Made by a program: the position numbers and the translations under genes. Positions 9,692 to 64,000 of a stretch of DNA of 64,000 bases are shown here, piece after piece. Below the pieces are notes generated by a model, which did no database searches, was not told the origin of the DNA, and saw only the letters and a list, made by a program, of their open reading frames with translations. The DNA is taken from positions 62,001 through 126,000 of IMG/VR virus record IMGVR_UViG_3300025141_000020. The stretch is one strand, 5' to 3'. Each line of letters starts with the position of its first letter. Position 1 is the stretch's first letter.

Positions 9692-9886
9692 TTAGTTATG
9701 TTTAACTTCCTTTCCTTCTTCTTTATGTCCACAATGTGGACATATAATTAAATTAGGTACTATTTGTTCACTTTTTGGTACGTTATTAGAAAACAAATGG
9801 TAGTCAGCAATTGACCACCATTTATTACATTTACCACAATTAAAGTGGTATAAAGTTTCTTTACTATATTTGTGTTTCACTGACAC
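9692..9886 (-). CDS. Small zinc-ribbon protein
   Basis: CGKC...CPHC pair in 64 aa; fills the gap after RNR and overlaps its stop. Confidence 0.6.
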   Translation of the reverse strand: MSVKHKYSKETLYHFNCGKCNKWWSIADYHLFSNNVPKSEQIVPNLIICPHCGHKEEGKEVKHN

Positions 9887-14724: not shown

Positions 14725-15159
14725 TTACTTTACAACTTCTACTAACTCTATTTCAAAGTTTAAATCTTCACCAGCTAAAGGATGGTTCATATCAAGATTT
14801 ATACTCTCTTCTTCTATTTTTACAACTTGTCCTTGTACTGGTCTCCCTTCGTTATCCTGGCCTTGTATAAACCCGTTAAGTTCATATTTCATGCCTTCTG
14901 GGAATTCTGATTTAGGCACTGTTATGACAGCTTTATCTATATATTTACCATATGCTTCTTCTGAAGTTAGTGAAATAGTTTTTTTATCACCAACTTCCAG
15001 TTCTTTAACCGCGTCATTAAAACCTTTAAGTAATTTACCGTCATCTATTGAAAACTCTAACGGTTGGTTTTTGTCTCTAGAGCTGTCGAATACTTGCCCT
15101 TCTTTAATTGTACCTACATAATGTACTTTAACTTTGTCTCCTGTTTTTAATTTAGTCAT
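14725..15159 (-). CDS. slyD: FKBP-type peptidyl-prolyl isomerase (SlyD/SlpA-like, no His-rich tail)
   Basis: GDKVKVHYVG, FDSS, PLEF, EAYG, IF insertion domain and DMNHPLAGEDLNFEIEL. Confidence 0.9.
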   Translation of the reverse strand: MTKLKTGDKVKVHYVGTIKEGQVFDSSRDKNQPLEFSIDDGKLLKGFNDAVKELEVGDKKTISLTSEEAYGKYIDKAVITVPKSEFPEGMKYELNGFIQGQDNEGRPVQGQVVKIEEESINLDMNHPLAGEDLNFEIELVEVVK

Positions 15160-47740: not shown

Positions 47741-50700
47741 TTAACAAGAACTGTCACATGCGTTTGGACAACACGATAACCAAGCTGGGTTTGTATCTGG
47801 TGCACCATATTGTGCGAAGTCAGAACATTGGAAATACCCACCAACATTCATTGTACCACATAAGTAACAACAACCATTATAGATTACGTTATCATTTTCT
47901 TGGTAGTTTATGAACGCGCTGTTGTACTCACCTCCTGACCAACCATATGAACTAGTGTTTAGTTGAGCTGGGTTTATCAGGCCGTTTATGTTGTTAGTTG
48001 CACATACATCACAACTACTTAAACAACAACTATAATCTGTACCCCCCCAAATGTTAGAACAGTCTGATGTTGCTATTGGGTTATATCCAAAAGAACTGGC
48101 GTCTGTACATCCTGATATGGATGTAAGTGGTGTGTAGGTACAACAACTATAATTTGTACCACCAATAGTACTAATACAATCGCAAGTCGCTTCATTATTA
48201 TAATTAAGTGCCGTTATATCCGTACATCCAGAAATACATACACCTGCTCCACCATATTCACAACAGTGTGTACTACTTCCACCCCCAACACCCCAACAAT
48301 CACATGTTGCGGCACCATTATAGTTAGATGCTGTTACATCCATACAACCAGGTACACAAGGTGGGTCAAAAATACAACAACTAATATCATAACCACCATT
48401 GTTATAGTTTACACCATTACAATCACAATATGGGTCAATATTAGCGTTACCACCCACACCATAATTAACAGCGGTATAAGCCATACAACCACTAGGACAA
48501 ATGGTGTCACATCCTGGACCCAAATACTCAGTACATAAACAACAATTTTCAAAAGCTGTACCCACTGAAAGTTCATCCCATTCACCAACCCAAGCAAAGT
48601 CACCTGAATTATTCCATGGTAATGTTCCTCCTGGACTATTTGAATAGTATCCCCCACTACTTGACGTCATATTTACAATATTAGTAGACGTTGTTGCGGT
48701 TAACCCCAAATAAGTAAAACACGCCCAACTACCATATAGGTCTGGGTCAGAAATTTTAGTTAGATAAGCCCCACCTAAACTAGTCCCTACTGTTGGTTGT
48801 CCTACTGAGTCCCAGAATAAGTTACTGTTATTAGTGTTACAAGGCTCAAACTCATTGTACCCTGGTAAAGTATCGTCAAGAAATACAATTTCGGTGACAC
48901 CTGAAAATATTTGCTCTAATGTTCCTCCAGAGTTTTGGCCTTCAGTCTCATTCCACTGCACAGAGCTACAGTAACTCCACATATGTAAATAACAGTTTTG
49001 TGGTTCTGGTGGTGGTTCTCCTGTTGGTACTGGTAATTCACAATCTCGACAACCTCCTGGACAATTCTTACATTCCTCACAATCAATTAGCGAATACCTT
49101 TCTTTATTTATTAAAAAATTATGATATACCTCATCAGCTGTTAGAGGTTTAATATAATACATCATTTGTGATATTCCCCCTATAAATGAACCAGCAAAGA
49201 ATTGTGATATTAGGTCGTTATCCTGTAGTACTGGTTTTTTGTTCTCTCTATATCCCCACGCTCCACCACCCCAAGACATATTATACGACACGCCAAATTG
49301 GCTTTCTGGTGTTTGATTTGTATGCCTAGGTATTATTTCTTCGTAGTCATTAACTGTGTGTACAATTCTACCATTTACATAGAATTTAAGTGTACCCATT
49401 CTCAAGTCTTTATCTGTAAACCAATGATATATGGTATTTGCGGAACAATATAGATTAAGTTTTCCTGGAATAAAGGTGTCACATATATTATTAGCGGAAT
49501 AAGGGTAGGTTCCAGTTATTAAGTCGTTAATACCACCCTTATTTAATAAATCACAATCTTCTAAATATATATTTCGGTCAAATACAACATCTACTTGTAT
49601 CCACGTATCAGCACAATTACCACTTAGTTCTGTAATAAAGGGGCAAATTGGTTCGGAATAAGATTCTTCTAACCCCCAACCGCAAGTCCATTGGGAGTTG
49701 GGGTTACATTCCCCACTCGTATCAATACAATCACCAGTATACCTTAGAGTCCTATAACCAATCCTCATATCGTCAGTTATTCTAAACCCTAAAACATTAC
49801 TATAGACATCTGTGGTTTGACCTTCTCTCAATCCTTTAAAAAAGAAAAATCCTGAATTATTTGTTACACCAGTGATTATACTACTTGAGTTCTTCCAGCT
49901 ATAATTCGTTAAGTTGTGAGGCATGGTGTCGCTCATACTATTAGGTGGGGTGTTACTGCATAATGTTGTTGAGCTTATCCCATTATATCCACTAGCGTTA
50001 TAACAGTTCTGTAATTGGTATCCTATGGTATTCAGTTTTAAATAACTGCTAAATGACCATCCTTTATTTGGTCTGGTAGGTAATACCTCATAATCATATC
50101 CGTGTAGTTTATAGAATCCTTGGTAAAACCCTCCTTTTAACTCTTGGTAATATCCTGAACTATCGTAAGCATTCATTATTGACGTGTCGGTAAAATAAGA
50201 GATTCCTGTTAATGGTAGGCCATATCCTTTAACCTGACTCATTTTAAACCTTTTATCAAAATGTAATTTGTTAAATGTGGATGCTATAGGTATTTGTTTG
50301 TAAATCTCTACACAATCAGATGGGGGGAGAAGTTGCACATTGGCTATATTAATATCATTATATAGTCCATTACTTCTAGCTGTCTCTGCTATTATTAAAT
50401 CACATTTTTTATCCACAGTTATACCACTACAATCACATACTGTTTTTGCACTTAACCAGGTAAATTTACTTAATATTGTAAAAGGTTCTGATGTTTGTGG
50501 TGATGCTGAAAGTACTGGATATTGGGTGAAACATGTTGTTATTGGTTGAGATGAACTGTCTGAGTCATTTAAGTCTATTAGTACTGGTAATACTGTAGTA
50601 TCACCTAACCCTATGATGTTGTTTGACCAAACCACTTCTGTATTAAAATCCTTTTCATCGGACACTAAAAAGAAGTCATAGTAGGAGCTATAGTTTAATT

Positions 50701-50749
50701 TAGCGTCAATCCTATTAAAATTATAATTGTTTAAATTTTGTGTTCCCAT
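47741..50749 (-). CDS. Large Cys-rich virion/adhesin-like protein, 1002 aa (LamG-like N-terminal half, Cys repeats, CBM-like end)
   Basis: WIQVDVVF...LKFYVNG...FIGGISQMMYYIKPLTADEV (LamG-like); PPPEP linker; four GCxD..NYN repeats. Confidence 0.6.
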   Translation of the reverse strand: MGTQNLNNYNFNRIDAKLNYSSYYDFFLVSDEKDFNTEVVWSNNIIGLGDTTVLPVLIDLNDSDSSSQPITTCFTQYPVLSASPQTSEPFTILSKFTWLSAKTVCDCSGITVDKKCDLIIAETARSNGLYNDINIANVQLLPPSDCVEIYKQIPIASTFNKLHFDKRFKMSQVKGYGLPLTGISYFTDTSIMNAYDSSGYYQELKGGFYQGFYKLHGYDYEVLPTRPNKGWSFSSYLKLNTIGYQLQNCYNASGYNGISSTTLCSNTPPNSMSDTMPHNLTNYSWKNSSSIITGVTNNSGFFFFKGLREGQTTDVYSNVLGFRITDDMRIGYRTLRYTGDCIDTSGECNPNSQWTCGWGLEESYSEPICPFITELSGNCADTWIQVDVVFDRNIYLEDCDLLNKGGINDLITGTYPYSANNICDTFIPGKLNLYCSANTIYHWFTDKDLRMGTLKFYVNGRIVHTVNDYEEIIPRHTNQTPESQFGVSYNMSWGGGAWGYRENKKPVLQDNDLISQFFAGSFIGGISQMMYYIKPLTADEVYHNFLINKERYSLIDCEECKNCPGGCRDCELPVPTGEPPPEPQNCYLHMWSYCSSVQWNETEGQNSGGTLEQIFSGVTEIVFLDDTLPGYNEFEPCNTNNSNLFWDSVGQPTVGTSLGGAYLTKISDPDLYGSWACFTYLGLTATTSTNIVNMTSSSGGYYSNSPGGTLPWNNSGDFAWVGEWDELSVGTAFENCCLCTEYLGPGCDTICPSGCMAYTAVNYGVGGNANIDPYCDCNGVNYNNGGYDISCCIFDPPCVPGCMDVTASNYNGAATCDCWGVGGGSSTHCCEYGGAGVCISGCTDITALNYNNEATCDCISTIGGTNYSCCTYTPLTSISGCTDASSFGYNPIATSDCSNIWGGTDYSCCLSSCDVCATNNINGLINPAQLNTSSYGWSGGEYNSAFINYQENDNVIYNGCCYLCGTMNVGGYFQCSDFAQYGAPDTNPAWLSCCPNACDSSC
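48013..48493 (-). repeat. Four 39-47-codon Cys-rich protein repeats (xGCxDxxAxNYNxxATCDC...GG...CC)
   Basis: GC codons start near 48490, 48349, 48229 and 48112. Confidence 0.8.
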
Positions 50750-53558: not shown

Positions 53559-53587
53559 TTGACTATTTAATTATTTCGTGTTATTAT
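53559..53587 (+). promoter_or_regulatory. Host-type promoter TTGACT-N17-TATTAT
   Basis: Ends 6 nt before first glycosyltransferase ATG. Confidence 0.6.
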
Positions 53588-53593
53588 TTTAAC

Positions 53594-54829
53594 ATGACAA
53601 ATAAAAAATATAAAATCTGTGTATTACCTTCGGATAGGACGGGAGTTTCTAAATTTCGTTCGGTAGACCCACACATATACTTACAAAAAATGTACCCAGA
53701 CGAATTCTGGGTGGATATAATATATGACCCACCATATCAAGATGATAGCTTTTGGAAACAGTTTGACTTAGTACATTATCATAGGAGTGTTGGACCTAAT
53801 CACGAATTAGCCAAAATGGTACAAAGAAAATTAACTAAGTGGGGAATTCCGCATATAATGGATTTGGATGATTATTGGTTGCCCACTTCTGACCATCCAG
53901 CTTATATGATGATTAAAGAAAGTAATTTACATAAGCATATAATGGACAACCTTAAGTTAGCTGGTCATGTAACTACCACCACTCCAGATTTTGTTACTGA
54001 GATTAAAAAGTTTAATAATAATGTATCCATATACCCCAATGGTATTGACCACAAAGAAAAGCAGTACGTTCCTAAACCCACTATTTCTGATAAAATTAGA
54101 GTTGGTTGGTTAGGTGGTTCTTCACATATAAGGGATTTGGAAATTTTAAATGGTGTTTTTGGTAGGCTTCATAGTGAACGAGCTGAGTCATTTCAAACAG
54201 TACTATGTGGTTATGATTTACGAGGGACTATGACTGAAATGGATAAAGTTACTGGAAAACAAAAACAAAGACCTATTTTACCAATTGAGTCTGTCTGGTA
54301 TAAATATGAACAGATATTCACCAACAACCACCAAAACCTATCTGAGGATTATAAGAAAGAACTAATGGAATTTAAAAAGAAATCTATAACTGGTGATTTG
54401 GATTCTGTTTATAGGAGGGTTTGGACTAAGCCTATAACGACCTACGCTTCCAACTATAACTACTTTGATGTTAGTTTGGCTCCCTTAAAAGAACATATTT
54501 TTAATAAGGTTAAGTCTCAGTTAAAGGTTATTGAGTCTGGATTTCATAAAAAAGCTTTAATCGCACAAGATTTTGGTCCTTACCAGATAGATTGTGTTAA
54601 CTTATTTGAGCGTGGTGGTAAATTAAACCCAAAAGGTAATTGTTTATTGGTTGATACAAATAAAAATCATAAGTTGTGGTATAAGTACATAAAGTACCTC
54701 ATAGATAATCCTAACGCGGTCACGGACTTAGGTGAAAAATTATACGAAACCGTGTATCCAAAATACTCACTAGAAAAAATTACAGAAACTAGAGCGGAGT
54801 TTTATAGGGAGTTAATAAAAAAATCATAA
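53594..54829 (+). CDS. GT-B fold (GT4-like) glycosyltransferase
   Basis: MDLDDYW, YPNGID, VGWLGGSSH and DVSLAPL...NKVKSQLKVIE motifs. Confidence 0.8.
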   Translation: MTNKKYKICVLPSDRTGVSKFRSVDPHIYLQKMYPDEFWVDIIYDPPYQDDSFWKQFDLVHYHRSVGPNHELAKMVQRKLTKWGIPHIMDLDDYWLPTSDHPAYMMIKESNLHKHIMDNLKLAGHVTTTTPDFVTEIKKFNNNVSIYPNGIDHKEKQYVPKPTISDKIRVGWLGGSSHIRDLEILNGVFGRLHSERAESFQTVLCGYDLRGTMTEMDKVTGKQKQRPILPIESVWYKYEQIFTNNHQNLSEDYKKELMEFKKKSITGDLDSVYRRVWTKPITTYASNYNYFDVSLAPLKEHIFNKVKSQLKVIESGFHKKALIAQDFGPYQIDCVNLFERGGKLNPKGNCLLVDTNKNHKLWYKYIKYLIDNPNAVTDLGEKLYETVYPKYSLEKITETRAEFYRELIKKS

Positions 54830-54843
54830 ATAAAAAAATCATA
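54814..54843 (+). repeat. Perfect 15-bp tandem duplication (AATAAAAAAATCATA)x2
   Basis: Copies at 54814-54828 and 54829-54843, spanning the glycosyltransferase stop. Confidence 0.85.
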
Positions 54844-54854
54844 AATAAAAAAAA

Positions 54855-55034
54855 ATGGCAGTAGAAATTAATATAATAGAGAATGGACCTATATTGGTCA
54901 AAGGAGAAACTACCGTAACAAAAGGTGGTGAAGAAGTAGTAGTTAGTGAAAATTATGCGTTGTGTAGATGTGGTCAATCCAAGAATCAACCAATGTGTGA
55001 TGGAGCACATAAATCATGTAATTTTAAAGGATAA
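54855..55034 (+). CDS. CDGSH iron-sulfur (NEET-type 2Fe-2S) protein, 59 aa (not in ORF track)
   Basis: Manual translation MAVEINIIENGPILVKG...ALCRCGQSKNQPMCDGAHK matches NGP...LCRCGxSxxxPxCDGxH. Confidence 0.88.
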   Translation: MAVEINIIENGPILVKGETTVTKGGEEVVVSENYALCRCGQSKNQPMCDGAHKSCNFKG

Positions 55035-55038
55035 AAAT

Positions 55039-55272
55039 ATGTATTATCAAGCAATCGTTGCATTCGAAACCGGAGTTATGGATAACGAAGGAAATGCTAA
55101 AGTTAAAAAATTTAAATATATTGTAGAAGCAGAATCTCTTTTTGAGGTTAATAAAAGGTTGGCGTCATATCTATCGGAAGATACGAGAGATTCAGAAATT
55201 GTGTCAATTGTTAAAGCTCCTTTTGAGGATTTTTTACATCCTCAATTAACCCCTAAGTATTATAATCTTTAA
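55039..55272 (+). CDS. DUF4494-like protein
   Basis: MYYQAIVAF...GNAKVKKFKYIVEAESLFEVNKRL resembles Bacteroidota DUF4494; true start is ATG 55039 after the CDGSH stop. Confidence 0.55.
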   Translation: MYYQAIVAFETGVMDNEGNAKVKKFKYIVEAESLFEVNKRLASYLSEDTRDSEIVSIVKAPFEDFLHPQLTPKYYNL

Positions 55273-55273
55273 T

Positions 55274-55855
55274 ATGAGTTTAAAAAAAGCGTCAACACCG
55301 TCTAATAAGTTTAATAATGAAGAAGCTATGTTTCGTCAATTAGGGATAGATGACGATATGATTAAAAAACTAGAAGAGGCGAGTTTAGATGCTGCCCGAG
55401 AAAAAGTTAAAATTAGTGTTAGGTATGTAAATACTAGCGATAATAGCGACCTTTCTTACAAGTATATTGATGATAGTGGGATGGACCTCCGAGCTAATTT
55501 AACAAATAGTTTAGTTATTAACCCAGGTGAAAGAATTTTAATTCCGACGGGGATTCATTTTGAACTACCTGAAAGTATGGAAATTCAAGTAAGACCTAGG
55601 TCTGGTTTAGCTATAAAAAATGGTATAACTGTCCTTAACACCCCAGGAACTGTAGATAGGGGTTATAATGGTGAAATTAAAGTTATTTTAATAAATTTAA
55701 GTAACGAAAAATTTACAGTAAATCATGGTGATAGAGTTGCTCAAGCTGTCATTTCTCCAGTCATATCTGGTAGGTGGTCAAAAATAATAAAAGTCGACTC
55801 GTTAAATGACTCTAGTAGAGGTGACGGTGGATTTGGTAGTACTGGAATAAATTAA
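55274..55855 (+). CDS. dut: Trimeric dUTPase with N-terminal extension
   Basis: SGMDL, RPRSGLA, GTVDRGYNGEI, GDRVAQ and RGDGGFGSTG motifs. Confidence 0.93.
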   Translation: MSLKKASTPSNKFNNEEAMFRQLGIDDDMIKKLEEASLDAAREKVKISVRYVNTSDNSDLSYKYIDDSGMDLRANLTNSLVINPGERILIPTGIHFELPESMEIQVRPRSGLAIKNGITVLNTPGTVDRGYNGEIKVILINLSNEKFTVNHGDRVAQAVISPVISGRWSKIIKVDSLNDSSRGDGGFGSTGIN

Positions 55856-55857
55856 TT

Positions 55858-57498
55858 ATGTCATTAACAGTTGTATTTAGTACAAAAAAAATAAACTTAG
55901 ATTTTGTAGAAATAATAAAGGCAACATCTGGTGTTCATAACATAGAGATACTTCCTTATGAAAACCCTGGAAAATACTCATTAACTGAAGTTTATAATAT
56001 GGGTATTAAAAAAGCTAAAAACGATATTATAATTTTTTGTCATGATGATATAAAGTTTGATACAAAAAACTGGGGTAGAAAAATATTAAAATTGTTTAAA
56101 AGGCATTCAGAATTTGGTATTATTGGTGTCGCTGGTAGTAGGTATATGCCTGAATCTGGTAAATGGTGGGAGGATTTCTCTAAAATGCATGGAGCGGTAT
56201 ACCATGAACACGAAGGAAAAAGATGGTTGTCCAGGTATTCCAACGATATAGGAAATTATTTAGATGAGGTTATTTTAGTAGACGGGTTATTTTTTGGTGT
56301 TCATAAAGATAGAATTTCACACCAATTTAATGAAGAGGTTGATGGATTTCATTTTTATGATGTTGACTTTTCTTTTTCTAATCATTTGTCTGGGACTAGA
56401 GTTGGTGTGTGTACAAATATAAAAATTACTCACTTGTCTATTGGGCAAACCAATTCTGAGTGGGAAGAAAATAGAATTATATTTGCGGAAAGATATAAGG
56501 ATTCTTTACCCTTAAAAATAAATCGTACCTTACGAAAGAACGAAAAACTAAACATACTCATTGGTTGCTTAAACTTTAATGATTATACTGGTTCTGAACT
56601 ACATGTATATGAGTTAGCTAAAGGTTTAAAAAAGTTGGGTCATAACATTACTATATGTTCTAATGTTGGTGGTGACATGAAAAATAAAGTTAACTCTTTA
56701 GGTATTCAGACTTTCCCTCTTAACGAACCACCAGGATTTAAATTAGGTGATGGGAAAACTAAGATTAATACTCCTGAAGGTGTTAAAATTCCTGCAGAGG
56801 GTCAACTATACCAAATAGAACCAATAAAATTTGACCTTATGCATCTACATCATAAGCCTATAACAGAACACTTATTAAAACTATACCCAACCACACCAAC
56901 TGTATGTACTATACATTCCGAAGTTATTGATTTAGAACACCCAGTAATAGATGGTAGGATTAAAAAATATATTTGTATACGACCAGAAATACAAAAATTT
57001 ATAACTGAGGACTTTGGTATTGCGGTAGATAAGACCAACGTAATTTATAATCCTTTTGATGTTGATAGATTTAAAACGTATCCTAAGCCAAAAACTGATA
57101 AAGAGAGGGTTTTGTTTATTGGTACGATAGATTACTTACGTCAAGAAGCTATAGAAGATTTAATAAATAAAACCAGGGAGGCTAATCAAGAACTATGGAT
57201 TGTAGGTAAAAAAAGGGAAGATTTTTTAGATGATTTAGATTTACCTCACCTTAAGTATTTTGACCCTACTTGGGATGTTGAGTCCTATATTAAACAGTGT
57301 CATTATACGGCAGGGATATTATTAGGTAGGACCACCATTGAGGGTTGGTTGTGTGGTAGAGAAGGGTGGATTTACGATGTTGATTCTAGTGGTAACATTA
57401 ATGGAGTTACTTTGAATGGGGTTCCTTCTGATATGGATAAATTTCACTCTAATAATGTTATGGATAAGATATTAACCACTTACGAAGAAATATTATAG
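55858..57498 (+). CDS. GT-A (GT2-like) plus GT-B (GT4-like) fusion glycosyltransferase
   Basis: YNMG...IIFCHDD...LDGLF...FHFYDVDF; then YTGSELHVYELAKGL...GHNITI, IYNPFD and FIGT. Confidence 0.75.
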   Translation: MSLTVVFSTKKINLDFVEIIKATSGVHNIEILPYENPGKYSLTEVYNMGIKKAKNDIIIFCHDDIKFDTKNWGRKILKLFKRHSEFGIIGVAGSRYMPESGKWWEDFSKMHGAVYHEHEGKRWLSRYSNDIGNYLDEVILVDGLFFGVHKDRISHQFNEEVDGFHFYDVDFSFSNHLSGTRVGVCTNIKITHLSIGQTNSEWEENRIIFAERYKDSLPLKINRTLRKNEKLNILIGCLNFNDYTGSELHVYELAKGLKKLGHNITICSNVGGDMKNKVNSLGIQTFPLNEPPGFKLGDGKTKINTPEGVKIPAEGQLYQIEPIKFDLMHLHHKPITEHLLKLYPTTPTVCTIHSEVIDLEHPVIDGRIKKYICIRPEIQKFITEDFGIAVDKTNVIYNPFDVDRFKTYPKPKTDKERVLFIGTIDYLRQEAIEDLINKTREANQELWIVGKKREDFLDDLDLPHLKYFDPTWDVESYIKQCHYTAGILLGRTTIEGWLCGREGWIYDVDSSGNINGVTLNGVPSDMDKFHSNNVMDKILTTYEEIL

Positions 57499-57499
57499 T

Positions 57500-58159
57500 A
57501 TGAAATTATTAATTAAATTTCCAACTAGAGTAAGGTCTAGAAAATTTTTAAAGGTGTTAAGTAAGTATGTGCGATTACTGGACGACAAAACAACCCAAAT
57601 AATAGTATCTTGTGATGATGACGACATTTCTATGAAAGAAGAGTTTGTTACCGAGGTAATTAGTCAATACGATAATGTTGAGGTTCAGTTTAACAATAAT
57701 TCTAATAAAATAGAAGCTATAAATCATAATATGGAAAACTTGGATTTTGATGTGGTTTTACTAGCTTCTGATGATATGGTTCCTAGGGTTAAAGGGTTTG
57801 ATACAATTATAAGAGAAAAGATGTTATCTCATTATCCAGATACTGATGGTGTATTATGGTTTAATGATGGATATAAAGGAAACGAACTAAATACTTTGTG
57901 TATCTTAGGTAAAAAATATTATGAAAGGTTTGGTTACATATACAGTCCGGAATATAAGTCTGTCTGGTGTGATAATGAGTTTATGGATGTATCAAAGTTA
58001 TTGGATAAGGTAACTTATTTCGATGAGGTTATAATTAGGCATGAACATCCTGACTGGGGGTTTGGTTCTAACGATGCCATACATATGAATAATATTAAAC
58101 ATGAAAGTGCTGATAGACTTACCTACGAAAGAAGAAAACAAAAAAATTTTGGTCTATGA
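57500..58159 (+). CDS. GT-A (GT2-like) glycosyltransferase
   Basis: IKFPTR, VSCDDDD, LLASDDMVP and WCDNEF motifs. Confidence 0.7.
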   Translation: MKLLIKFPTRVRSRKFLKVLSKYVRLLDDKTTQIIVSCDDDDISMKEEFVTEVISQYDNVEVQFNNNSNKIEAINHNMENLDFDVVLLASDDMVPRVKGFDTIIREKMLSHYPDTDGVLWFNDGYKGNELNTLCILGKKYYERFGYIYSPEYKSVWCDNEFMDVSKLLDKVTYFDEVIIRHEHPDWGFGSNDAIHMNNIKHESADRLTYERRKQKNFGL

Positions 58160-59016
58160 AACAAATATGTACAGTATCAGACATAAATTATCTCAATAAA
58201 GGATTAACATTATACGAGTCTCTTATTAAAAACACTAATGATTTTATTTTACATTACTTGTGCATAGATGAAGCTACACATAAAAAAATACTACCTTTTG
58301 CATGTTCTTCTTTAAAGGTTTATGACCTTAATGATTTGTTAAGTGGTGATAAGTTTCTAAATGACCTTAAAAGTTCAGAGTATAGTTATTTTTGTTGGTC
58401 CTTGGCTTCCTATTTTAGTAATTTCTTACTTTACGCGATAGATGAGGATATAACTTATATTGATAGTGACATTTATTTCCACAAAAGTTTAGATATTGTT
58501 TTAGATGAAATTGGGTCTAGGGATGTAGGCATTTTTAGACATCGTCAATTTCCTTTAAATTTATATAGACCTGAAGGGTTGTATAATGTTGGCGTTGTAC
58601 ATTTTAAATCAACTGAATTAGGCATTAAAACTTCTGATTGGTGGAAAGAATCGGTTTTGCATAAAAGACACCCAGAGTATGCTACTTGTGGTGACCAAAA
58701 ATATTTAGAGTATTTTCCTATATTATGTGATAAAGATTCAATATATATTGATGATAATGTGGGTCATGGTGCACCATGGCATTGGCAAACATTTGAGTTT
58801 TTAGGTGGTGGTAAAATAAAGTATGGTGGTCAGGAACAGGATTTGGTATTTACTCACTTCTCCCAATTTTCTGATGACGGTGAAACCTACATCCCATCAA
58901 AAATGCACCATATCTACACACCCCTTAAAGAATACTCAAATAACCCACAACTAAAGGCTATTTATGATGAATACCATTTAGAATTAAATAAAACAAAAAA
59001 TAAATATGGTGAATAA
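58156..59016 (+). CDS. GT-A nucleotide-diphospho-sugar transferase (GT8-like)
   Basis: TYIDSDIYF, YNVGVV, GDQKYL and FTHFS motifs. Confidence 0.7.
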   Translation: MKQICTVSDINYLNKGLTLYESLIKNTNDFILHYLCIDEATHKKILPFACSSLKVYDLNDLLSGDKFLNDLKSSEYSYFCWSLASYFSNFLLYAIDEDITYIDSDIYFHKSLDIVLDEIGSRDVGIFRHRQFPLNLYRPEGLYNVGVVHFKSTELGIKTSDWWKESVLHKRHPEYATCGDQKYLEYFPILCDKDSIYIDDNVGHGAPWHWQTFEFLGGGKIKYGGQEQDLVFTHFSQFSDDGETYIPSKMHHIYTPLKEYSNNPQLKAIYDEYHLELNKTKNKYGE

Positions 59017-59743
59017 TAAAGTGGTAAAAATACCAGCTCATAAATTAAATCCTCTTCTTGATACCATACATGGTCACACATTTAGAAGTGATTTATTAAC
59101 TAAAGGTGGCTATGTTCTAGACCTAGGTTGTAATGATTTTGTATTTTCTAATTACATGCTTAGTATAGGGATGAAGGTAATCGCGTTAGACCCAATAAAA
59201 GATTTACGTATCCCTAGTAATTTTAAACATCTAGAAAATAACCCAAATTTTACATACCTACAAAGAGCTTGTGTTGGTGTTAAGAATGGCGATACCGCGA
59301 CATATTACGAATATCTCCATTGGGGGGCAAACTCTTTAGTAAATAAACCAGAGATGTTACATAGGAGTACTAATGGTGGTCATGCTAATAACCCCTATAA
59401 GGCATCATATGAAGTTCCCTTAACTACATTAACAGAATTAATGTCAGAATTTAATATACCAAAATTTGAATTTATTAAAATTGATGTTGAGGGCTCTGAA
59501 TATGGTATTCTCTCTACTTTTCCGCATGAATGCACAAAACAATTATCGGTAGAGTTCCACGCTTTTCTAGGTTTAAATCCGTCAGATGATGTTGAGGGTT
59601 ATCATGACGATTTAACTAATAATAAATTATCGTCCTATAGTCTTGAATTTGAGGACAAGGACCTGTTGGATTCTTCTGGTGGTGAGTACGGAGAGGTTTT
59701 TCAAAGAAATGATGTTTTGTATGTATTAAAAAAATATACCTAA
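59006..59743 (+). CDS. FkbM-family SAM-dependent methyltransferase
   Basis: VLDLGCN, ALDP, IKIDVEGSE and QLSVEFH motifs. Confidence 0.8.
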   Translation: MVNNKVVKIPAHKLNPLLDTIHGHTFRSDLLTKGGYVLDLGCNDFVFSNYMLSIGMKVIALDPIKDLRIPSNFKHLENNPNFTYLQRACVGVKNGDTATYYEYLHWGANSLVNKPEMLHRSTNGGHANNPYKASYEVPLTTLTELMSEFNIPKFEFIKIDVEGSEYGILSTFPHECTKQLSVEFHAFLGLNPSDDVEGYHDDLTNNKLSSYSLEFEDKDLLDSSGGEYGEVFQRNDVLYVLKKYT

Positions 59744-60627
59744 TGAAAATAGCGTTTGGAATGATAGTATTTGAAGGAGATTATGTTCTTAAACAATGTT
59801 TGGAACAGGTTTACCCGTTTGCTGAACAAATACTTATTTCTGAGGGACCTGTATCTTATTGGCAAAAGCAGGGTAGGACAACATCTTTAGATAATACTAA
59901 TAAGATTTTATCCGACTTCCCAGACCCAGATAATAAAATTAAAGTTGTGCATGGTCAATTTAATGAAAAAGATGACCAATGTAAGGCGTATATGCAATAT
60001 ATTAATGACGATATAGAGTATATATGGAATTTAGATTCTGATGAAATATATAAAACTGATGATTTAAAAAAAATAATAAGTTTTTTAGAGTCTGAGTCCC
60101 CAACTAGTGTTGGTGTTAGGAGTTGTTCTTTTTATGGTGGTTTTGATGATTATTTAACTGGTTTCGAATTAAATAGGGATAATTTTCTAAGAATATTTAG
60201 GTATGTTAAGGGTTCTACTTGGTTGACCCATAGACCACCCACAATTCAATACCCTGTAGGTTCAAATATTAGTAAACATCACATAGATAGTGAAACCCTT
60301 TATAATAAATTAGGGGTACAAATGTATCACTACTCATATACCTTCCCTGACCAAGTTTATAAAAAAGTTAATTACTATAAAGATAGTGTTAGTAAAGATA
60401 ATTGTATTGATGATTATTTTAATAGGGTTTATCTTCCGTGGGTTAATGGAGATAGAACTCGTATTGAAAAACAGTTTCTAGGGGTTCACGAATTTAAACC
60501 TCATTCAAGAGGAGAATGTTTTACATCTCCCTTTATTTTATCACACCCCGAATCTATAATTAATGATATGGAGGAATTAAAAAATAAATTTAAAAAACAA
60601 CTAAAAAAATATAAATATGTTAAGTAA
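59743..60627 (+). CDS. GT2-like glycosyltransferase
   Basis: IAFGMIVFEG, ISEG and WNLDSDEIY motifs. Confidence 0.7.
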   Translation: MKIAFGMIVFEGDYVLKQCLEQVYPFAEQILISEGPVSYWQKQGRTTSLDNTNKILSDFPDPDNKIKVVHGQFNEKDDQCKAYMQYINDDIEYIWNLDSDEIYKTDDLKKIISFLESESPTSVGVRSCSFYGGFDDYLTGFELNRDNFLRIFRYVKGSTWLTHRPPTIQYPVGSNISKHHIDSETLYNKLGVQMYHYSYTFPDQVYKKVNYYKDSVSKDNCIDDYFNRVYLPWVNGDRTRIEKQFLGVHEFKPHSRGECFTSPFILSHPESIINDMEELKNKFKKQLKKYKYVK

Positions 60628-61429
60628 TGAAGAGGGTAATAATTTTATAAAGGAAAAGATTTTATCTGGTGAACCATTTATAGCTAGTAAGATGGGTGGT
60701 GTTGAGCAAAATGTAATTTTATGTAATATGAATGGTAACTATCATCATATACGTGAAATGGCTTCAACTAATGCAGGAATAACACCAGCTGACGATAACA
60801 CATTAAATTACTTCTGTGAACGATATATTGATGCGTTGGGTAAGGTTGACATATTAGGTCACATGCCATCACCACAAGAGAAACATATACTATCAACATA
60901 TGCCCCACAATCTAAATTTTCAGAGTTAAGGTTGTTAGAACCTTTTTATTTTGATAATCCTTGGAGTGAAACATTAAAAGGTAAAAAAGTGTTAGTGATA
61001 CATCCATTTGAAGACACCATATTAAAACAATTTGTTAATAGGGAAAAATTATTTGATAACGAGAAGGTGTTGCCAGATTTTACTTTACTAACCATTAAGT
61101 CTGAACAAACTAATGGTGGTGGTACCGGAAATAATAAACCATTCAAAGAATCTATGGAATTAATGGAAGATAAGATTCTTAAATCTGATTTTGATGTTGC
61201 TATTATTGGTTGTGGTGCTTATGGATTACCGTTAGCCTTAGTTTGTAAAGAGATGGGTAAACAAGCAATTCATATAGGTGGTGGGTTACAAATACTATTT
61301 GGTATTAAAGGTAAACGTTGGGATGTTCACCCGGAAATAAGTGCTATGTACAACGACTATTGGACAAGACCTATGGATAATGAAAAAACAATAAACTTCC
61401 AATCTATAGAGGGTGGTACTTATTGGTAA
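60617..61429 (+). CDS. Putative GT-D-fold-like glycosyltransferase
   Basis: KKVLVIHPF, DFDVAIIGCGAYGLPLA...GKQAIHIGG..QILFGI motifs. Confidence 0.5.
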   Translation: MLSNEEGNNFIKEKILSGEPFIASKMGGVEQNVILCNMNGNYHHIREMASTNAGITPADDNTLNYFCERYIDALGKVDILGHMPSPQEKHILSTYAPQSKFSELRLLEPFYFDNPWSETLKGKKVLVIHPFEDTILKQFVNREKLFDNEKVLPDFTLLTIKSEQTNGGGTGNNKPFKESMELMEDKILKSDFDVAIIGCGAYGLPLALVCKEMGKQAIHIGGGLQILFGIKGKRWDVHPEISAMYNDYWTRPMDNEKTINFQSIEGGTYW

Positions 61430-61441
61430 ATAAATTTTAAT

Positions 61442-62293
61442 ATGAGGAATGTCTTCTTAATAAATGTTAGTGAAAATCCGTTAGTGGTAAAAAATCAAAT
61501 AGATAATATTAAAAAATTTGTATCTAACGATGAGGTTATTGTGCTACACATATCTAATACAACTAAAGATAATTTTATTAACGACTCTAATACCCATAAT
61601 TTAGATTTCTATAATATGGAATCTGATGGTATATATGTAAACCCAACAAATATACCTACTCAACGAGGTCATTTATTGACTGATGCTTTCTTATCTAGTT
61701 TCGATTTTATAAAAGGTAGGGTGGACTTTGGTAAAGTGGTTTTAAACAGCAGTAATCAGTTATTTTTCAAACATGGGTTTAAAGAACATTTAGATAATTA
61801 TAGAGTTGGTTTATATAAAATAGAAACATTGGGTCCGTCTGGAATGTTCCCAAATGCTAAGCCGAAACCATTTATTACTAAAATATTTGGTGAGGAGAGA
61901 AAGAGTTATTGGTCATACCATGAGGGTAGTTTTTTTGATAAGGGTGATTTTGAGACTATTAGTGATTTAATCAAAGACAATAATTTTGACGGAACTAGTG
62001 AGGAACAAACAATACCCACTTTATTCCATAATCTATATAATGATAAAGACCTTAAAATCTCCCCAACATCAGTGTGGATGAATCTTTATTTGTCACTTGA
62101 TGAGATTTCAGCTATGAAACTTATATTAGATTCTGAATATGAGAAATTACGTGGATATGTACGTTACGGTTTAGCTGATAGTACTAACACCCCTCTTAGA
62201 GATGTTATGTTGTCTGGTGATTTTTTATTTGGGATTAAACGGGTTGGTAGGACTATGGATTGTCCAACCAGGTCATTCATTAACGGCTTATGA
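61442..62293 (+). CDS. Hypothetical protein in glycosylation operon, 283 aa
   Basis: Long ORF in the operon; no motif recognised with confidence. Confidence 0.6.
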   Translation: MRNVFLINVSENPLVVKNQIDNIKKFVSNDEVIVLHISNTTKDNFINDSNTHNLDFYNMESDGIYVNPTNIPTQRGHLLTDAFLSSFDFIKGRVDFGKVVLNSSNQLFFKHGFKEHLDNYRVGLYKIETLGPSGMFPNAKPKPFITKIFGEERKSYWSYHEGSFFDKGDFETISDLIKDNNFDGTSEEQTIPTLFHNLYNDKDLKISPTSVWMNLYLSLDEISAMKLILDSEYEKLRGYVRYGLADSTNTPLRDVMLSGDFLFGIKRVGRTMDCPTRSFINGL

Positions 62294-62294
62294 T

Positions 62295-63113
62295 ATGAAT
62301 AGTATATTAGGCTTAAAGGGAAATTCAGGTTGTGAGTTAGCTATTTTAGGAGATACGATTCGAAAGTCTTGCGAACGTAACTATAACGATAGGTTAAAAT
62401 TACAGTGTAAAAAACAAACTGATTTTAATAATGGTATATTTAGTACACCAAAAGTTTATGAATCTGGTATAGACAATCAAGGAAAATTCTTTTTTAATAT
62501 GGAATTCATGCCGTGTAAAACGTTTGATAGGGTATTTAATACTGCAACTAAGGCTTATTTAGATACTATTATAGGAAAACTCTTGGATTTCACAATAGCG
62601 AATACTAAAAAAACAACGGATTTTTCAAGTAAGATAATAACCACCAAATATGAATCAGTAAAAAATAACATAAGGGCACAGAAAAATATTGATGTTAGCT
62701 ATTTAGACGATATTTTTTATTCATTAGATGAAACTATAAACATACCTGAAGGTTATTGTCATGGAGATTTAACATTTTCTAATTTATTATTCGATGGAGA
62801 TAATATAGTTTTGTTAGATTTTTTAGATACCTATCTAGACTCACCAATGCAGGACATTGTAAAAATTAGACAAGATACAAAATATCATTGGTCTATAAGA
62901 ATGTTAGATTGTAAGTTTGATGGAGTAAAATTGACTCAGTGCCTAAATTATATTGATAAAAAAATAGATTATGAGTTCTCAAAAAATGAGTACTATGTAG
63001 AATACTATGCAGTTTTTCAGATTCTAAATTTACTTAGAATAGTACCATACTGTAAAGAAATAAAGAATGTTAATTATTTAATAAATGAAGTAGATAAGTT
63101 ATGTCAACACTAA
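62295..63113 (+). CDS. APH/choline-kinase-like phosphotransferase
   Basis: MEFM hinge, CHGDLTFSNLL and LLDF motifs; ATG 62295 preferred over track start 62202. Confidence 0.8.
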   Translation: MNSILGLKGNSGCELAILGDTIRKSCERNYNDRLKLQCKKQTDFNNGIFSTPKVYESGIDNQGKFFFNMEFMPCKTFDRVFNTATKAYLDTIIGKLLDFTIANTKKTTDFSSKIITTKYESVKNNIRAQKNIDVSYLDDIFYSLDETINIPEGYCHGDLTFSNLLFDGDNIVLLDFLDTYLDSPMQDIVKIRQDTKYHWSIRMLDCKFDGVKLTQCLNYIDKKIDYEFSKNEYYVEYYAVFQILNLLRIVPYCKEIKNVNYLINEVDKLCQH

Positions 63114-64000
63114 TAATACCATGTGCAGGTAGAAGCACAAGATTCCCTAACTCTAGGCCTAAATGGTCTCTTACCCATCCTTACGGAGACTTAATGTTTA
63201 TTCAGTCGATTAAGGGGTTAGATTTAAGCAAATACTCAGAAATAGTATCAGTTTTTCTAAAAGAAGACATCGAAAAGTTTAATTTATTAGATGGGCTTAA
63301 TCAGTCTCTTGGAGAAATAGACGTGAAAACATCAATAGTTTTACTTGAGGAACCAACATCTAGCCAAAGCGAAACTGTTTCAGAAGCTATAAAGGCATTA
63401 AACCTTAAGGGAGATATCCTAATAAAAGATTGTGACGCATATTTTACAGCTGAATATAGTACTGGAAATTTTGTTTATACTTCAAATCTTAGAGATGTTT
63501 CAAACATCAAAGCAAGTAGTAAGAGTTATGTTGATGTGGATAAGAATGGAATAATACAAACAGTAGTAGAAAAAGATGTAATTAGTAATGAATTTTGCTG
63601 CGGTGGATATGGATTTTCAGACGCAGAAAAGTTTGTACAGACCTATGATAAGCTAAAAGATTCTGCAGAAGGAGAAATTTATATTTCACATATAATTTTT
63701 CAACAACTACTAGATGGAGAACAGTTTATTACTTGTAGTACTTCAAACTTCAATGATTGGGGAACATTAAAGGATTGGAATGAGTATAAAAAACAATATA
63801 AAACTTTATTTTTAGACTTGGATGGTGTATTGGTGGAAAATTCGGGAGAATATATAGGAAAAAGATGGGGCACCACTGATGCTCTAGAATCAAATAAAGA
63901 CTACATAAACAATTTGTATGAAACAGGCAAGGTGAGAATAATATTCACAACTTCTAGAAAGAGTAAATTTAAAGGTGAAACTATTTCACAACTAGAAAAA
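63101..64000 (+). CDS. Nucleotidyltransferase-HAD phosphatase fusion, truncated by window edge (not in ORF track)
   Basis: Manual translation: IIPCAGRSTRFP..RPKW, KDCD and DWGT, then LFLDLDGVL and IIFTTSR; open to 64000. Confidence 0.82.
   Translation, partial: MSTLIIPCAGRSTRFPNSRPKWSLTHPYGDLMFIQSIKGLDLSKYSEIVSVFLKEDIEKFNLLDGLNQSLGEIDVKTSIVLLEEPTSSQSETVSEAIKALNLKGDILIKDCDAYFTAEYSTGNFVYTSNLRDVSNIKASSKSYVDVDKNGIIQTVVEKDVISNEFCCGGYGFSDAEKFVQTYDKLKDSAEGEIYISHIIFQQLLDGEQFITCSTSNFNDWGTLKDWNEYKKQYKTLFLDLDGVLVENSGEYIGKRWGTTDALESNKDYINNLYETGKVRIIFTTSRKSKFKGETISQLEK

What the first reader, a model, noticed from the sequence alone, without database searches (positions are those of the whole stretch)
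54855..55034. Phage-encoded CDGSH (NEET-type) 2Fe-2S protein missed by the ORF track
The 59-aa ORF has the complete 3Cys-1His ligand set (C37, C39, C48, H52). NEET proteins hold labile, redox- and pH-sensitive clusters and transfer them to other proteins. Here it could supply or scavenge Fe-S clusters or sense redox state during infection. To my knowledge this is an unusual phage gene.
Basis: partly seen in the sequence, partly recalled or inferred. Interest (0 to 1): 0.6.

Follow-up and report, generated by a model that had tools for sequence, protein, structure and literature searches.

The report
Phage-encoded type 4 CDGSH iron-sulfur protein
A 59-codon gene in an uncultured marine jumbo phage encodes a complete bacterial-type (type 4) CDGSH [2Fe-2S] protein kept under purifying selection; such genes are missing from reference phage collections and from the literature searched, yet recur in uncultured marine viral contigs.

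Summary
The ORF at 54855..55034 (+) is real. It has the full CDGSH signature (C37, C39, C48, H52) and scores 62.4 bits against Pfam zf-CDGSH (cut-off 29.5). The window is part of a 210.6-kb IMG/VR myovirus-like record.

By sequence, predicted fold and predicted dimer it is a prokaryotic type 4 CISD, like RsCISD (PDB 3TBM). It is not a NEET (type 1) protein.

At least 21 IMG/VR contigs and about 70 protein clusters from marine metagenomes carry orthologues (60-100% identity). They sit in the same slot: glycosyltransferase, CDGSH, DUF4494-like, dUTPase. Median dN/dS is 0.18 and the ligands never change. The phage copies form one clade next to Bacteroidota CISDs, at no more than 55% identity. Some relatives lack the gene, so it is accessory.

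"Unusual phage gene" is half right. There is no PHROG, no structural match in BFVD, one borderline hit in 50,697 GenBank phage records, and no paper. However, at least 120 IMG/VR contigs carry CDGSH motifs in about six architectures.

The function is inferred: a small homodimeric redox-active or labile [2Fe-2S] protein supporting the infected cell's redox or Fe-S economy. No phage-encoded client was found. Cluster binding and expression are untested.

The parts
54855..55034 (+). CDGSH gene (59 aa plus TAA): a stand-alone type 4 CDGSH iron-sulfur domain protein
   Evidence: ORF. Pfam PF09360 62.4 bits, E 4.9e-17. Profile match to PDB 3TBM at E 1.4e-16 over residues 3-58. dN/dS median 0.18.
54963..55010 (+). 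Cluster-binding loop, codons 37-52 (CRCGQSKNQPMCDGAH), with predicted ligands C37, C39, C48, H52
   Evidence: Read directly. C37, C39, C48, D49, G50 and H52 are invariant in 22 distinct nucleotide versions, with synonymous variation at C48, D49, G50 and H52. C55 is not conserved (C/E/N/T), so it is not a ligand.
54885..54899 (+). [quoted passage not shown]
   Evidence: G11, P12, L14 and V15 are invariant and I13 nearly so in alignment A2. The motif and its N-terminal position define types 3/4 in Lin et al. 2011 (PMC3174974).
54815..54844 (+). Perfect 15-nt tandem duplication ATAAAAAAATCATAA x2. The first copy is the 3' end and stop of the upstream gene. The second copy fills most of the 25-nt A-rich, Shine-Dalgarno-less spacer before the CDGSH ATG.
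   Evidence: Relatives carry 0-3 extra small genes at this junction.
53594..54829 (+). Upstream gene (411 aa), a glycosyltransferase; the conserved left border of the slot
   Evidence: phrog_7162 glycosyltransferase, E 9.9e-39. Present in all relatives examined.
53559..53587 (+). Sigma-70-like promoter candidate TTGACT-17-TATTAT with a TG extension, just before the 411-aa gene; a possible start of the transcription unit that includes the CDGSH gene
   Evidence: Consensus scan only; not evidence of function.
55039..55272 (+). Downstream gene (77 aa), DUF4494-like, starting 4 nt after the CDGSH stop; the conserved right neighbour
   Evidence: PF14902 at 22 bits, below its cut-off of 27. Present in all relatives, including those lacking the CDGSH gene.
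55274..55855 (+). dUTPase gene
   Evidence: PF00692 at 87.4 bits; phrog_135 E 3.7e-52.

Best explanation
The gene encodes a soluble, stand-alone type 4 CDGSH iron-sulfur domain protein (CISD). It is predicted to form an intertwined homodimer. Each subunit would hold one [2Fe-2S] cluster through C37, C39, C48 and H52, under the lid proline P12. An ancestor of this marine jumbo-phage lineage took the gene long ago from a bacterium, most likely of the Bacteroidota. The lineage has kept it under purifying selection as an accessory gene in a variable slot between a glycosyltransferase gene and a DUF4494-like/dUTPase pair. It is probably co-transcribed with those genes.

Inferred function: during infection it acts as a small one-electron carrier and/or donor of a labile, His-ligated cluster. 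It would add to or replace the host's own CISD activity, supporting the redox and Fe-S economy of the infected cell.

Shown: the sequence family, motif conservation, selection, synteny, and distribution. Predicted: the fold and the dimer. Inferred: cluster binding, expression, and physiological role.
For: Identity:
- Pfam zf-CDGSH 62.4 bits against a 29.5 cut-off.
- Full-length profile match to the type 4 CISD 3TBM, E 1.4e-16.
- The AF2 model has five N-terminal strands. Its only confident PDB match is 3tbm_A: prob 1.00, TM 0.60, 46% identity.
- Homodimer model ipSAE 0.92 against a best control of 0.03. In the tool's calibration the mark was reached by 20 of 30 solved pairs and 1 of 23 single chains. 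Runs agree in at least 97% of contacts and partner pLDDT is at least 95 (96 in each run).
- In that model beta1 (residues 3-7) pairs with beta3' (19-23), and R38-G40 touch across the dyad. Lin et al. 2011 describe the same features for RsCISD.
- K53 after the His ligand matches the conserved Lys57 of RsCISD.

Real gene in real phages:
- 73 related protein clusters and 21 IMG/VR loci.
- The same gene order on contigs up to 289,567 b, whose name ends in '_c' (taken as circular).
- One copy in each of 5 related virus records, one of them 93% complete.
- dN/dS median 0.18 over 230 pairs, with invariant ligands.
- GC 33.9% against 33.5% for the window.

Origin:
- The phage copies form one clade (SH-aLRT 93). 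It sits in a polytomy with Bacteroidota CISDs and is separated (94) from the Actinomycetota/Pseudomonadota/Rokubacteria group.
- The best cellular identity is 55%.
- 193 of 301 Flavobacteriaceae genomes match over the full length, mostly as Fer4_19+CISD proteins.
- Pelagibacteraceae match only the cluster loop.
Against: - No experiment shows cluster binding here.
- Expression is untested; no RNA run could be listed.
- No physiological function is reported for type 4 CISDs in the papers read here, and I know of none, so the role rests on the chemistry of the family.
- No phage-encoded Fe-S or Fe(II) client was found. Radical_SAM, 2OG-FeII_Oxy_3 and Fe-S_biosyn gave 0 hits in the own record. Ribonuc_red_sm, 2OG-FeII_Oxy_5 and Fer2 gave 0 of 5 records.
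- Two related contigs (L232, L233) lack the gene and carry a 35-aa hydrophobic ORF in its place, so it is dispensable for the lineage.
- The dimer score may reflect the model's memory of 3TBM.
- The tree rests on 60 columns and is poorly resolved.
- The host is not identified.
Confidence: 0.55

Rival explanations
1. The phage CISD works mainly by pairing with the host's own CISD. The type 4 fold is an obligate intertwined dimer, and most Flavobacteriaceae carry a Fer4_19+CISD (type 7) protein. The phage's bare CISD module could therefore form heterodimers with the host protein, diverting or blocking its electron or cluster pathway, or it could act as a redox or iron sensor. It would not be a plain extra carrier.
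For: The phage protein is the CISD module alone, whereas the best Flavobacteriaceae matches carry an N-terminal Fer4_19 domain. Dimerisation through beta-strand swapping is predicted with high confidence and is described for RsCISD. The phage copy is distinct from cellular copies (at most 55% identity), so it is more than a spare copy of the host gene.
Against: No heterodimer was modelled or tested, and the host is unknown. At 45-55% identity the interface may not be compatible. Nothing in the locus points to regulation. This is pure inference.
Confidence: 0.15
2. The gene is a nearly neutral passenger (moron) in a hypervariable slot, with no specific role in infection.
For: The slot between the glycosyltransferase and the DUF4494-like gene varies. 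It holds 0-3 extra small genes in relatives. In L232/L233 the CDGSH gene is replaced by a 35-aa ORF. One contig (P0070) carries an in-frame fusion that deletes the cluster loop.
Against: dN/dS is 0.18 with invariant ligands, at synonymous divergence up to about 0.87 from the window copy. The copies form one clade. The gene is present in 5 of 5 large related records, in 21 IMG/VR loci and in the 22 contigs read for one cluster. Its composition is fully ameliorated.
Confidence: 0.12
3. The protein binds zinc or another metal, or no metal at all, and serves as a small structural or nucleic-acid-binding 'zinc finger'. This is what the historical Pfam name suggests.
For: [quoted passage not shown] No metal analysis exists for this protein.
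Against: The crystal structures described in Lin et al. 2011 (types 1, 3, 4 and 6) all hold [2Fe-2S]. The full ligand set, the lid proline and the Lys after His are conserved here.
Confidence: 0.04
4. The gene is not viral. It would be host DNA on a misassembled or misclassified contig.
For: IMG/VR contigs are metagenomic. The record is linear and estimated 66% complete.
Against: Phage genes flank it on both sides within the window. The same synteny occurs on many independent assemblies from different samples, including a 289,567-b contig whose name ends in '_c' (taken as circular). Cellular homologues are at most 55% identical and lie in unrelated contexts.
Confidence: 0.02

Closest known systems
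RsCISD, the type 4 CDGSH iron-sulfur protein of Ralstonia solanacearum (PDB 3TBM; Lin et al. 2011, PMC3174974)
   Same: Full-length sequence match (E 1.4e-16), with 46% identity in the structural alignment. [quoted passage not shown] The predicted strand-swapped homodimer has the same beta1-beta3' pairing and R-C-G contact across the dyad.
   Different: The gene is encoded by a phage. The protein is shorter (59 aa against 69 aa) with almost no tails. It belongs to a separate clade found only on viral contigs. Cluster binding has not been shown for it.
Type 7 CISDs of Bacteroidota (Fer4_19/DUF1271 + CISD, about 140-160 aa)
   Same: These are the closest cellular relatives of the CISD module (up to 55% identity over residues 3-59). 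They share the P motif and CDGSH loop and are common in the suspected host group (193 of 301 Flavobacteriaceae genomes matched).
   Different: The phage protein has no Fer4_19 domain. The tree cannot say whether it derives from a type 7 or a stand-alone type 4 gene.
mitoNEET/CISD1 and other NEET proteins (type 1 CISDs)
   Same: The same 3Cys-1His [2Fe-2S] ligand set and 17-residue binding loop. By analogy, the cluster is probably redox-active, pH-sensitive and transferable (established knowledge of the family).
   Different: There is no membrane anchor. The order of the P motif and the CDGSH motif is reversed, and nothing follows the CDGSH loop. The sequence match to CISD1 covers only residues 30-56 (E 1.8e-6 for the best CISD1 chain, about 1e-5 to 1e-4 for most others). 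The fold class is different (Lin et al. 2011).
Other CDGSH-bearing ORFs on IMG/VR viral contigs
   Same: The same cluster-binding loop on uncultured, mostly AT-rich viral contigs, some next to hallmark phage genes (T4-like terminase and portal, tail fibre, RNR, GroEL).
   Different: Most lack the beta-cap. They comprise bare 20-93-aa loops (60 contigs), a loop fused to a 2OG-Fe(II) oxygenase domain (17), proteins of about 72 aa with a C-terminal loop (21), tandem 79-aa forms (3), and PCMT+CDGSH (1). Only 3 further contigs outside the jumbo clade carry a type-4-like protein.
Phage-encoded ferredoxins and Fe-S cluster assembly genes described as marine viral auxiliary metabolic genes (my own knowledge, not checked here)
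   Same: Small host-derived Fe-S or redox genes carried by marine phages, thought to sustain host metabolism during infection.
   Different: The fold and ligand set are different. No Fer2 or IscA-type gene was found in this phage lineage. No CDGSH gene is mentioned in the phage literature searched.

Membership tests
CDGSH iron-sulfur domain (Pfam zf-CDGSH, PF09360) | Signature C-X-C-X2-(S/T)-X3-P-X-C-D-G-(S/A/T)-H with three Cys and one His ligand | tested here: met
   C37-R-C39-G-Q-S42-K-N-Q-P46-M-C48-D49-G50-A51-H52. The ligands are invariant in 22 distinct gene versions.
CDGSH iron-sulfur domain (Pfam zf-CDGSH, PF09360) | Score above the curated gathering threshold over the whole profile | tested here: met
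   62.4 bits against 29.5; profile positions 1-48 of 48. The genome-level search gave 61.8 bits.
CDGSH iron-sulfur domain (Pfam zf-CDGSH, PF09360) | Binds a [2Fe-2S] cluster | not testable with these tools
   Needs purified protein (UV-vis, EPR, Fe/S analysis). Inferred from the complete ligand set and the family's solved structures.
Type 4 CISD (RsCISD-like, prokaryote-specific fold; Lin et al. 2011) | [quoted passage not shown] | tested here: met
   G11-P12-I13-L14-V15. G11, P12, L14 and V15 are invariant in A2. Definition.
Type 4 CISD (RsCISD-like, prokaryote-specific fold; Lin et al. 2011) | Five consecutive beta-strands N-terminal to the cluster loop that build the beta-sandwich | tested here: met
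   The AF2 model has strands 4-7, 13-16, 19-23, 26-30 and 34-36 (mean pLDDT 75.5). The top PDB match is 3tbm_A with prob 1.00 and TM 0.60. This is a prediction, not a structure.
Type 4 CISD (RsCISD-like, prokaryote-specific fold; Lin et al. 2011) | Intertwined homodimer with intermolecular beta1-beta3' pairing and back-to-back cluster modules | tested here: met
   ipSAE 0.92 against a best control of 0.03 (calibration: 20 of 30 solved pairs and 1 of 23 single chains reach the mark). Residues 3-7 contact 19-23 of the other chain, and 36-40 contact 36-40. The pass may partly reflect memory of 3TBM. It supports likeness and does not prove binding.
Type 4 CISD (RsCISD-like, prokaryote-specific fold; Lin et al. 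2011) | Lys or Arg directly after the His ligand (Lys57 of RsCISD, conserved in more than 90% of type 4 CISDs) | tested here: met
   K53 in the window. The position is K or T across the clade.
NEET proteins (type 1 CISD: mitoNEET/CISD1, CISD2) | [quoted passage not shown] | tested here: not met
   The protein is 59 aa with no hydrophobic N-terminal segment. It ends 7 residues after H52, and the P motif is N-terminal. NEET chains match only residues 30-56.
Type 7 CISD (Fer4_19/DUF1271 + CISD) | Fer4_19 (DUF1271) domain fused to the CISD | tested here: not met
   Pfam finds only zf-CDGSH in the phage protein. The Flavobacteriaceae relatives have both domains.
Phage auxiliary (host-derived) gene | Cellular homologues exist, and the gene sits on bona fide phage genomes, is inherited within the phage lineage and is under purifying selection | tested here: met
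   Cellular homologues at up to 55% identity. Phage synteny. One clade, SH-aLRT 93. dN/dS 0.18. Expression during infection was not tested.

The most novel reading that the evidence does not exclude
CDGSH modules may be a widespread, so far undescribed class of viral Fe-S/redox genes in the ocean. They occur in at least six architectures: stand-alone type 4 proteins in jumbo phages, bare cluster loops, loops fused to 2OG-Fe(II) oxygenases or to a PCMT methyltransferase, C-terminal loops on proteins of about 72 aa, and tandem forms next to T4-like terminases. On this reading, phages use them to keep iron enzymes reduced or to redirect labile iron and clusters in iron-poor water. In this jumbo phage the bare CISD module may do so by pairing with the host's Fer4_19-CISD protein.
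Probability: 0.3. Interest if true: 0.65.

Novelty: new member of a known kind. Interest (0 to 1): 0.42.

Why it matters
CDGSH/NEET proteins are studied intensively in eukaryotes. Their bacterial relatives still have no known job, and the two evolutionary surveys of the family read here do not mention viruses.

A phage lineage has kept a minimal 59-residue CISD for a long time. This gives a compact, easily expressed model protein. It also implies that CISD activity matters during a short, well-defined physiological episode, namely infection, which could help reveal what prokaryotic CISDs do.

If the wider set of viral CDGSH ORFs is real and expressed, it adds an iron/redox item to the list of functions that marine phages bring into their hosts. 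That is relevant to iron-limited oceans. The finding itself is an ordinary member of a known protein family in a new carrier, not a new kind of system.

Tried and rejected
1. A YfaE-like role, as a 2Fe-2S reductant maintaining the class Ia RNR small subunit. Rejected. The phage RNR (9864-11795) carries the B12-dependent class II insertion domain, and no Ribonuc_red_sm was found in 5 related records.

2. A partner among phage-encoded Fe-S or Fe(II) enzymes. Radical_SAM, 2OG-FeII_Oxy_3 and Fe-S_biosyn gave no hit in the own record. 2OG-FeII_Oxy_5 and Fer2 gave no hit in 5 of 5 records. Only a glutaredoxin-like ORF exists, outside the window. These records are 48-93% complete, so absence is not proven.

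3. A Cas4-like Fe-S nuclease as client. A PDDEXK_1 nuclease occurs in 3 of 5 relatives, but its 255-259-aa sequence lacks the CX2CX5C cluster motif.

4. Guilt by association in bacteria. Neighbours of cellular type 4 CISDs are not conserved (adenylate kinase and RF3; LutB-like and peroxiredoxin; a phosphorylase). None resembles the phage's DUF4494-like protein, dUTPase or 411-aa protein.

5. Obligate coupling with the downstream DUF4494-like gene. Rejected, because L232 and L233 keep that gene without the CDGSH gene.

6. Expression. No RNA run could be listed.

7. Host assignment.
- Shine-Dalgarno cores occur before only 3 of 50 genes, and leaders are A-rich. The closest CISDs are from Bacteroidota. 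The DNA polymerase's nearest catalogued phages are Salinibacter phages at 24% identity. These points lean towards a Bacteroidota host.
- Against that, the Bacteroidota -7 promoter motif TAnnTTTG is not enriched and the window has no tRNA.
- The host is left open.

8. Phage collections. tblastn of the 73-aa, tandem and 51-aa viral CDGSH classes against GenBank phages found nothing. The 280-aa fusion matched cyanophage 2OG-Fe(II) oxygenases only outside its CDGSH loop.

9. The large representative-protein search was not run.

Full report
**The observation**

The ORF at 54855..55034 (+) is present as described. It is 59 codons long, and its ATG is the first start after an in-frame stop. Residues 37-52 read CRCGQSKNQPMCDGAH. 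This is the complete CDGSH signature, with ligands C37, C39, C48 and H52.

Pfam zf-CDGSH matches over its whole profile at 62.4 bits (cut-off 29.5, E 4.9e-17). PHROGs and NCBIfam have no model that matches. The ORF was missed earlier simply because it is shorter than 60 aa.

**The carrier**

The window is bases 62001-126000 of a linear IMG/VR virus record of 210,568 b, with a CheckV completeness estimate of 66%.
- It encodes a baseplate wedge protein, tail sheath, DnaB-like helicase, family B DNA polymerase and ribonucleotide reductase.
- It also encodes a 5'-3' exonuclease, an FKBP-type isomerase, a gp32-like protein and an SNF2 helicase.
- GC content is 33.5%.

This is a large myovirus-type phage with no close cultured relative. 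The nearest catalogued DNA polymerases are those of Salinibacter phages, at 24% identity.

**The locus**

All genes in this region are on the + strand and tightly packed:
- a glycosyltransferase (53594-54829; phrog_7162);
- a 25-nt A-rich spacer;
- the CDGSH gene;
- a 4-nt gap;
- a 77-aa DUF4494-like gene (55039-55272);
- a dUTPase (55274-55855);
- a run of glycosyltransferases.

A sigma-70-like promoter match lies just before the 411-aa gene. This is a consensus match only. The spacer before the CDGSH gene is largely a perfect 15-nt tandem duplication of the end of the upstream gene.

**What kind of CDGSH protein it is**

A profile of the phage family matches the type 4 CISD of Ralstonia (PDB 3TBM) over its full length, at E 1.4e-16. 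NEET proteins match only the cluster loop.

An AlphaFold2 model (mean pLDDT 75.5) has five beta-strands before the loop. Its only confident PDB match is 3tbm_A: prob 1.00, TM 0.60, 46% identity.

Lin et al. 2011 (PMC3174974) define type 4 by four features:
- five N-terminal strands;
- a strand-swapped homodimer with beta1-beta3' pairing;
- a conserved Lys after the His ligand.

All four are present or predicted here. The P motif is G11-P12-I13-L14-V15 and the Lys is K53.

The homodimer model, with two 2Fe-2S clusters riding along, scored ipSAE 0.92 against a best control of 0.03. In the tool's calibration the mark was reached by 20 of 30 solved pairs and 1 of 23 single chains. The runs agree in at least 97% of contacts and partner pLDDT is at least 95 (96 in each run). 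Residues 3-7 contact 19-23 of the other chain, and residues 36-40 meet across the dyad. The pass may partly be memory of 3TBM. It shows likeness, not binding.

The protein is therefore not NEET-type in the strict sense. It has no membrane anchor, and nothing follows the loop.

**Is it a real, maintained phage gene?**

The word search found 73 related protein clusters. About 69 of them are proteins of 50-74 aa at 65-97% identity, from marine metagenomes including Tara, on contigs up to 289,567 b. IMG/VR holds 21 loci of the family.

In every context examined, the order CDGSH, DUF4494-like, dUTPase, glycosyltransferase is kept. Each of five large related records, one of them 93% complete, has exactly one copy.

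Among 22 distinct nucleotide versions:
- the median pairwise dN/dS is 0.18, with dS up to about 0.87 relative to the window copy;
- C37, C39, C48, D49, G50 and H52 never change, despite synonymous variation at C48, D49, G50 and H52;
- C55 is variable, so it is not a ligand.

Composition matches the phage, with GC 33.9% and GC3 16.7%.

The gene is nevertheless accessory. The stretch between the glycosyltransferase and the CDGSH gene holds 0-3 extra small genes in relatives. Two related contigs (L232, L233) have a 35-aa hydrophobic ORF in place of the CDGSH gene.

**Origin**

Cellular relatives reach at most 55% identity.

A maximum-likelihood tree of 88 CISD domains was built on 60 columns and is poorly resolved. 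It puts all phage copies on one branch (SH-aLRT 93). That branch sits in a polytomy with Bacteroidota type 4 and type 7 CISDs. It is separated (94) from the Actinomycetota/Pseudomonadota/Rokubacteria group.

The phage protein matches 193 of 301 sampled Flavobacteriaceae genomes over its full length. Most of those matches lie in frames of about 140-160 aa, and the two examined are Fer4_19+CISD, that is type 7. It matches 97 of 151 Pelagibacteraceae genomes, mostly over the cluster loop alone, in tandem-type frames.

This fits one old acquisition from a Bacteroidota-like source followed by vertical descent. The host itself is not established:
- the lack of Shine-Dalgarno sites (3 of 50 genes) and the A-rich leaders point the same way;
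- the Bacteroidota promoter motif is not enriched.

**How unusual is it?**

In catalogued phages the gene is very unusual.
- There is no PHROG.
- Nothing similar exists in BFVD (best prob 0.38 and TM 0.40 in separate rows, E of 0.6 or more).
- 50,697 GenBank phage records gave one hit, at E 2e-3. It is a 64-aa type-4-like ORF on an unverified faecal phage scaffold, MT835643.1.
- Full-text searches found no paper on phage CDGSH genes.
- The two surveys of CDGSH evolution read here never mention viruses.

In uncultured viral contigs it is not rare. I sorted these and spot-checked them with Pfam:

| Architecture | Contigs |
|---|---|
| This jumbo-phage family | 15 |
| Other type-4-like proteins | 3 |
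| N-terminal CDGSH loop fused to a 2OG-Fe(II) oxygenase domain | 17 |
| Proteins of about 72 aa with a C-terminal loop | 21 |
| Tandem 79-aa proteins | 3 |
| PCMT+CDGSH | 1 |
| Short ORFs that are little more than the loop | 60 |

Some of these sit next to hallmark phage genes: a T4-like terminase and portal, a tail fibre gene, RNR, and GroEL.

**Function**

This part is inference. The conserved 3Cys-1His site, lid proline and dimer module predict a redox-active [2Fe-2S] protein with a His-ligated, potentially labile cluster.

I looked for a phage-encoded client and found none. Radical SAM, IscA-type and 2OG-FeII_Oxy_3 genes were not found in the own record, and NrdB, Fer2 and 2OG-FeII_Oxy_5 genes were not found in any of the five related records. 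The RNR is the B12-dependent class II type. A PD-(D/E)XK nuclease in relatives lacks the Cas4 cluster motif. Bacterial neighbours of type 4 CISDs give no consistent hint.

The most likely reading is a small electron carrier and/or cluster donor that supplements the host's own CISD function during infection. A more speculative variant is pairing with the host's Fer4_19-CISD protein.

Expression could not be checked, because no RNA run could be listed.

**Verdict**

It is a new member (a new carrier) of a known protein kind, type 4 CISD, not a new system. It has moderate interest for two reasons: phage CISDs are undescribed, and they appear recurrent in marine viral metagenomes.

The costly representative-protein search was not needed and was not run.

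Noticed in passing
IMG/VR loci L114:5136-5975 (+), L115:8635-9363 (+), L197:2756-3631 (+), and 14 more: Proteins of 165-292 aa on viral contigs whose first ~20 residues are a bare CDGSH cluster loop, fused to a 2OG-FeII_Oxy_3 domain (Pfam). L114 lies next to a tail-fibre gene. In GenBank phages only the oxygenase part has relatives, in Synechococcus phages at 26-37% identity. This may be a built-in Fe-S module for an Fe(II) oxygenase.
   Followed up: partly
IMG/VR loci L110-L229, classes: Sixty viral contigs carry ORFs of 20-93 aa that are essentially only the CDGSH loop, for example 39 aa in L110:3280-3396 (-) at 31.9 bits. Another 21 carry proteins of about 72 aa with the loop at the C-terminus. 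Three carry tandem 79-aa CISDs, one (L135) beside a T4-like terminase and portal. It is unknown whether a loop without the beta-cap can hold a cluster.
   Followed up: partly
L214:2028-2717 (+): A 230-aa protein on a viral contig that combines a protein-L-isoaspartate O-methyltransferase (PCMT, 180.6 bits) with a C-terminal CDGSH loop (35.3 bits).
   Followed up: no
L233:2616-2729 and L232 (same region): Two related phage contigs lack the CDGSH gene. Between the 412-aa glycosyltransferase and the DUF4494-like gene they carry a 35-aa hydrophobic ORF (MGILTLIIGFGVGLVSGLYLSSQIEKNINKRINKK), read off the alignment consensus. The slot behaves as a small-gene cassette site.
   Followed up: partly
Protein P0070 (79 aa, ENA contig of 1049 b): The first ~30 residues of the CDGSH protein are joined in frame to the C-terminal ~45 residues of the downstream DUF4494-like protein, deleting the cluster loop. 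This is either a natural deletion variant or an assembly artefact.
   Followed up: no
window 54815-54844: A perfect 15-nt tandem duplication (ATAAAAAAATCATAA x2) spans the stop of the glycosyltransferase gene and most of the spacer before the CDGSH start. It may be a recombination scar at the variable junction.
   Followed up: partly
window, all 50 long ORFs: Only 3 of 50 genes have a Shine-Dalgarno core upstream (background 7.9%). Positions -14 to -11 are about 60% A. This suggests translation initiation of the Bacteroidota or cyanobacterial type. There is no tRNA gene in the window.
   Followed up: partly
window 9864-11795 (-) and G000:C1:162625-162795 (-): The phage RNR is the B12-dependent class II type (RNR-II insertion domain), with no small subunit in five related records. 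A glutaredoxin-like ORF lies outside the window.
   Followed up: partly
window 18142-24201 (-), 3751-7269 (-), 25602-28463 (-), 28475-30661 (-), 47741-50749 (-): Five very large ORFs (2019, 1172, 953, 728 and 1002 aa) have no PHROG match at 1e-5. They are probably lineage-specific structural or replication proteins.
   Followed up: no
window 53594-54829 and 55858-64000 (+); L002-L008: The CDGSH gene is embedded in a long island of glycosyltransferases. In relatives the island also holds sugar epimerases/dehydratases and methyltransferases. This suggests glycan or DNA-sugar modification by this phage lineage. The window also encodes an FKBP-type isomerase (14725-15159), and relatives carry a cyclophilin-type isomerase next to the CDGSH gene.
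   Followed up: no
MT835643.1 14065-14814 (L230:268-462, +): An unverified, unannotated 23-kb 'Bacteriophage sp.' scaffold from faecal metagenomes encodes a 64-aa type-4-like CISD with the motif CRCGKSSNQPFCDGSH. It was the only CDGSH hit among 50,697 GenBank phage records.
   Followed up: partly
PMC12972064 (Southern Ocean gene catalogue): [quoted passage not shown] Whether phage or Flavobacteriaceae CISDs contribute to this was not examined.
   Followed up: no
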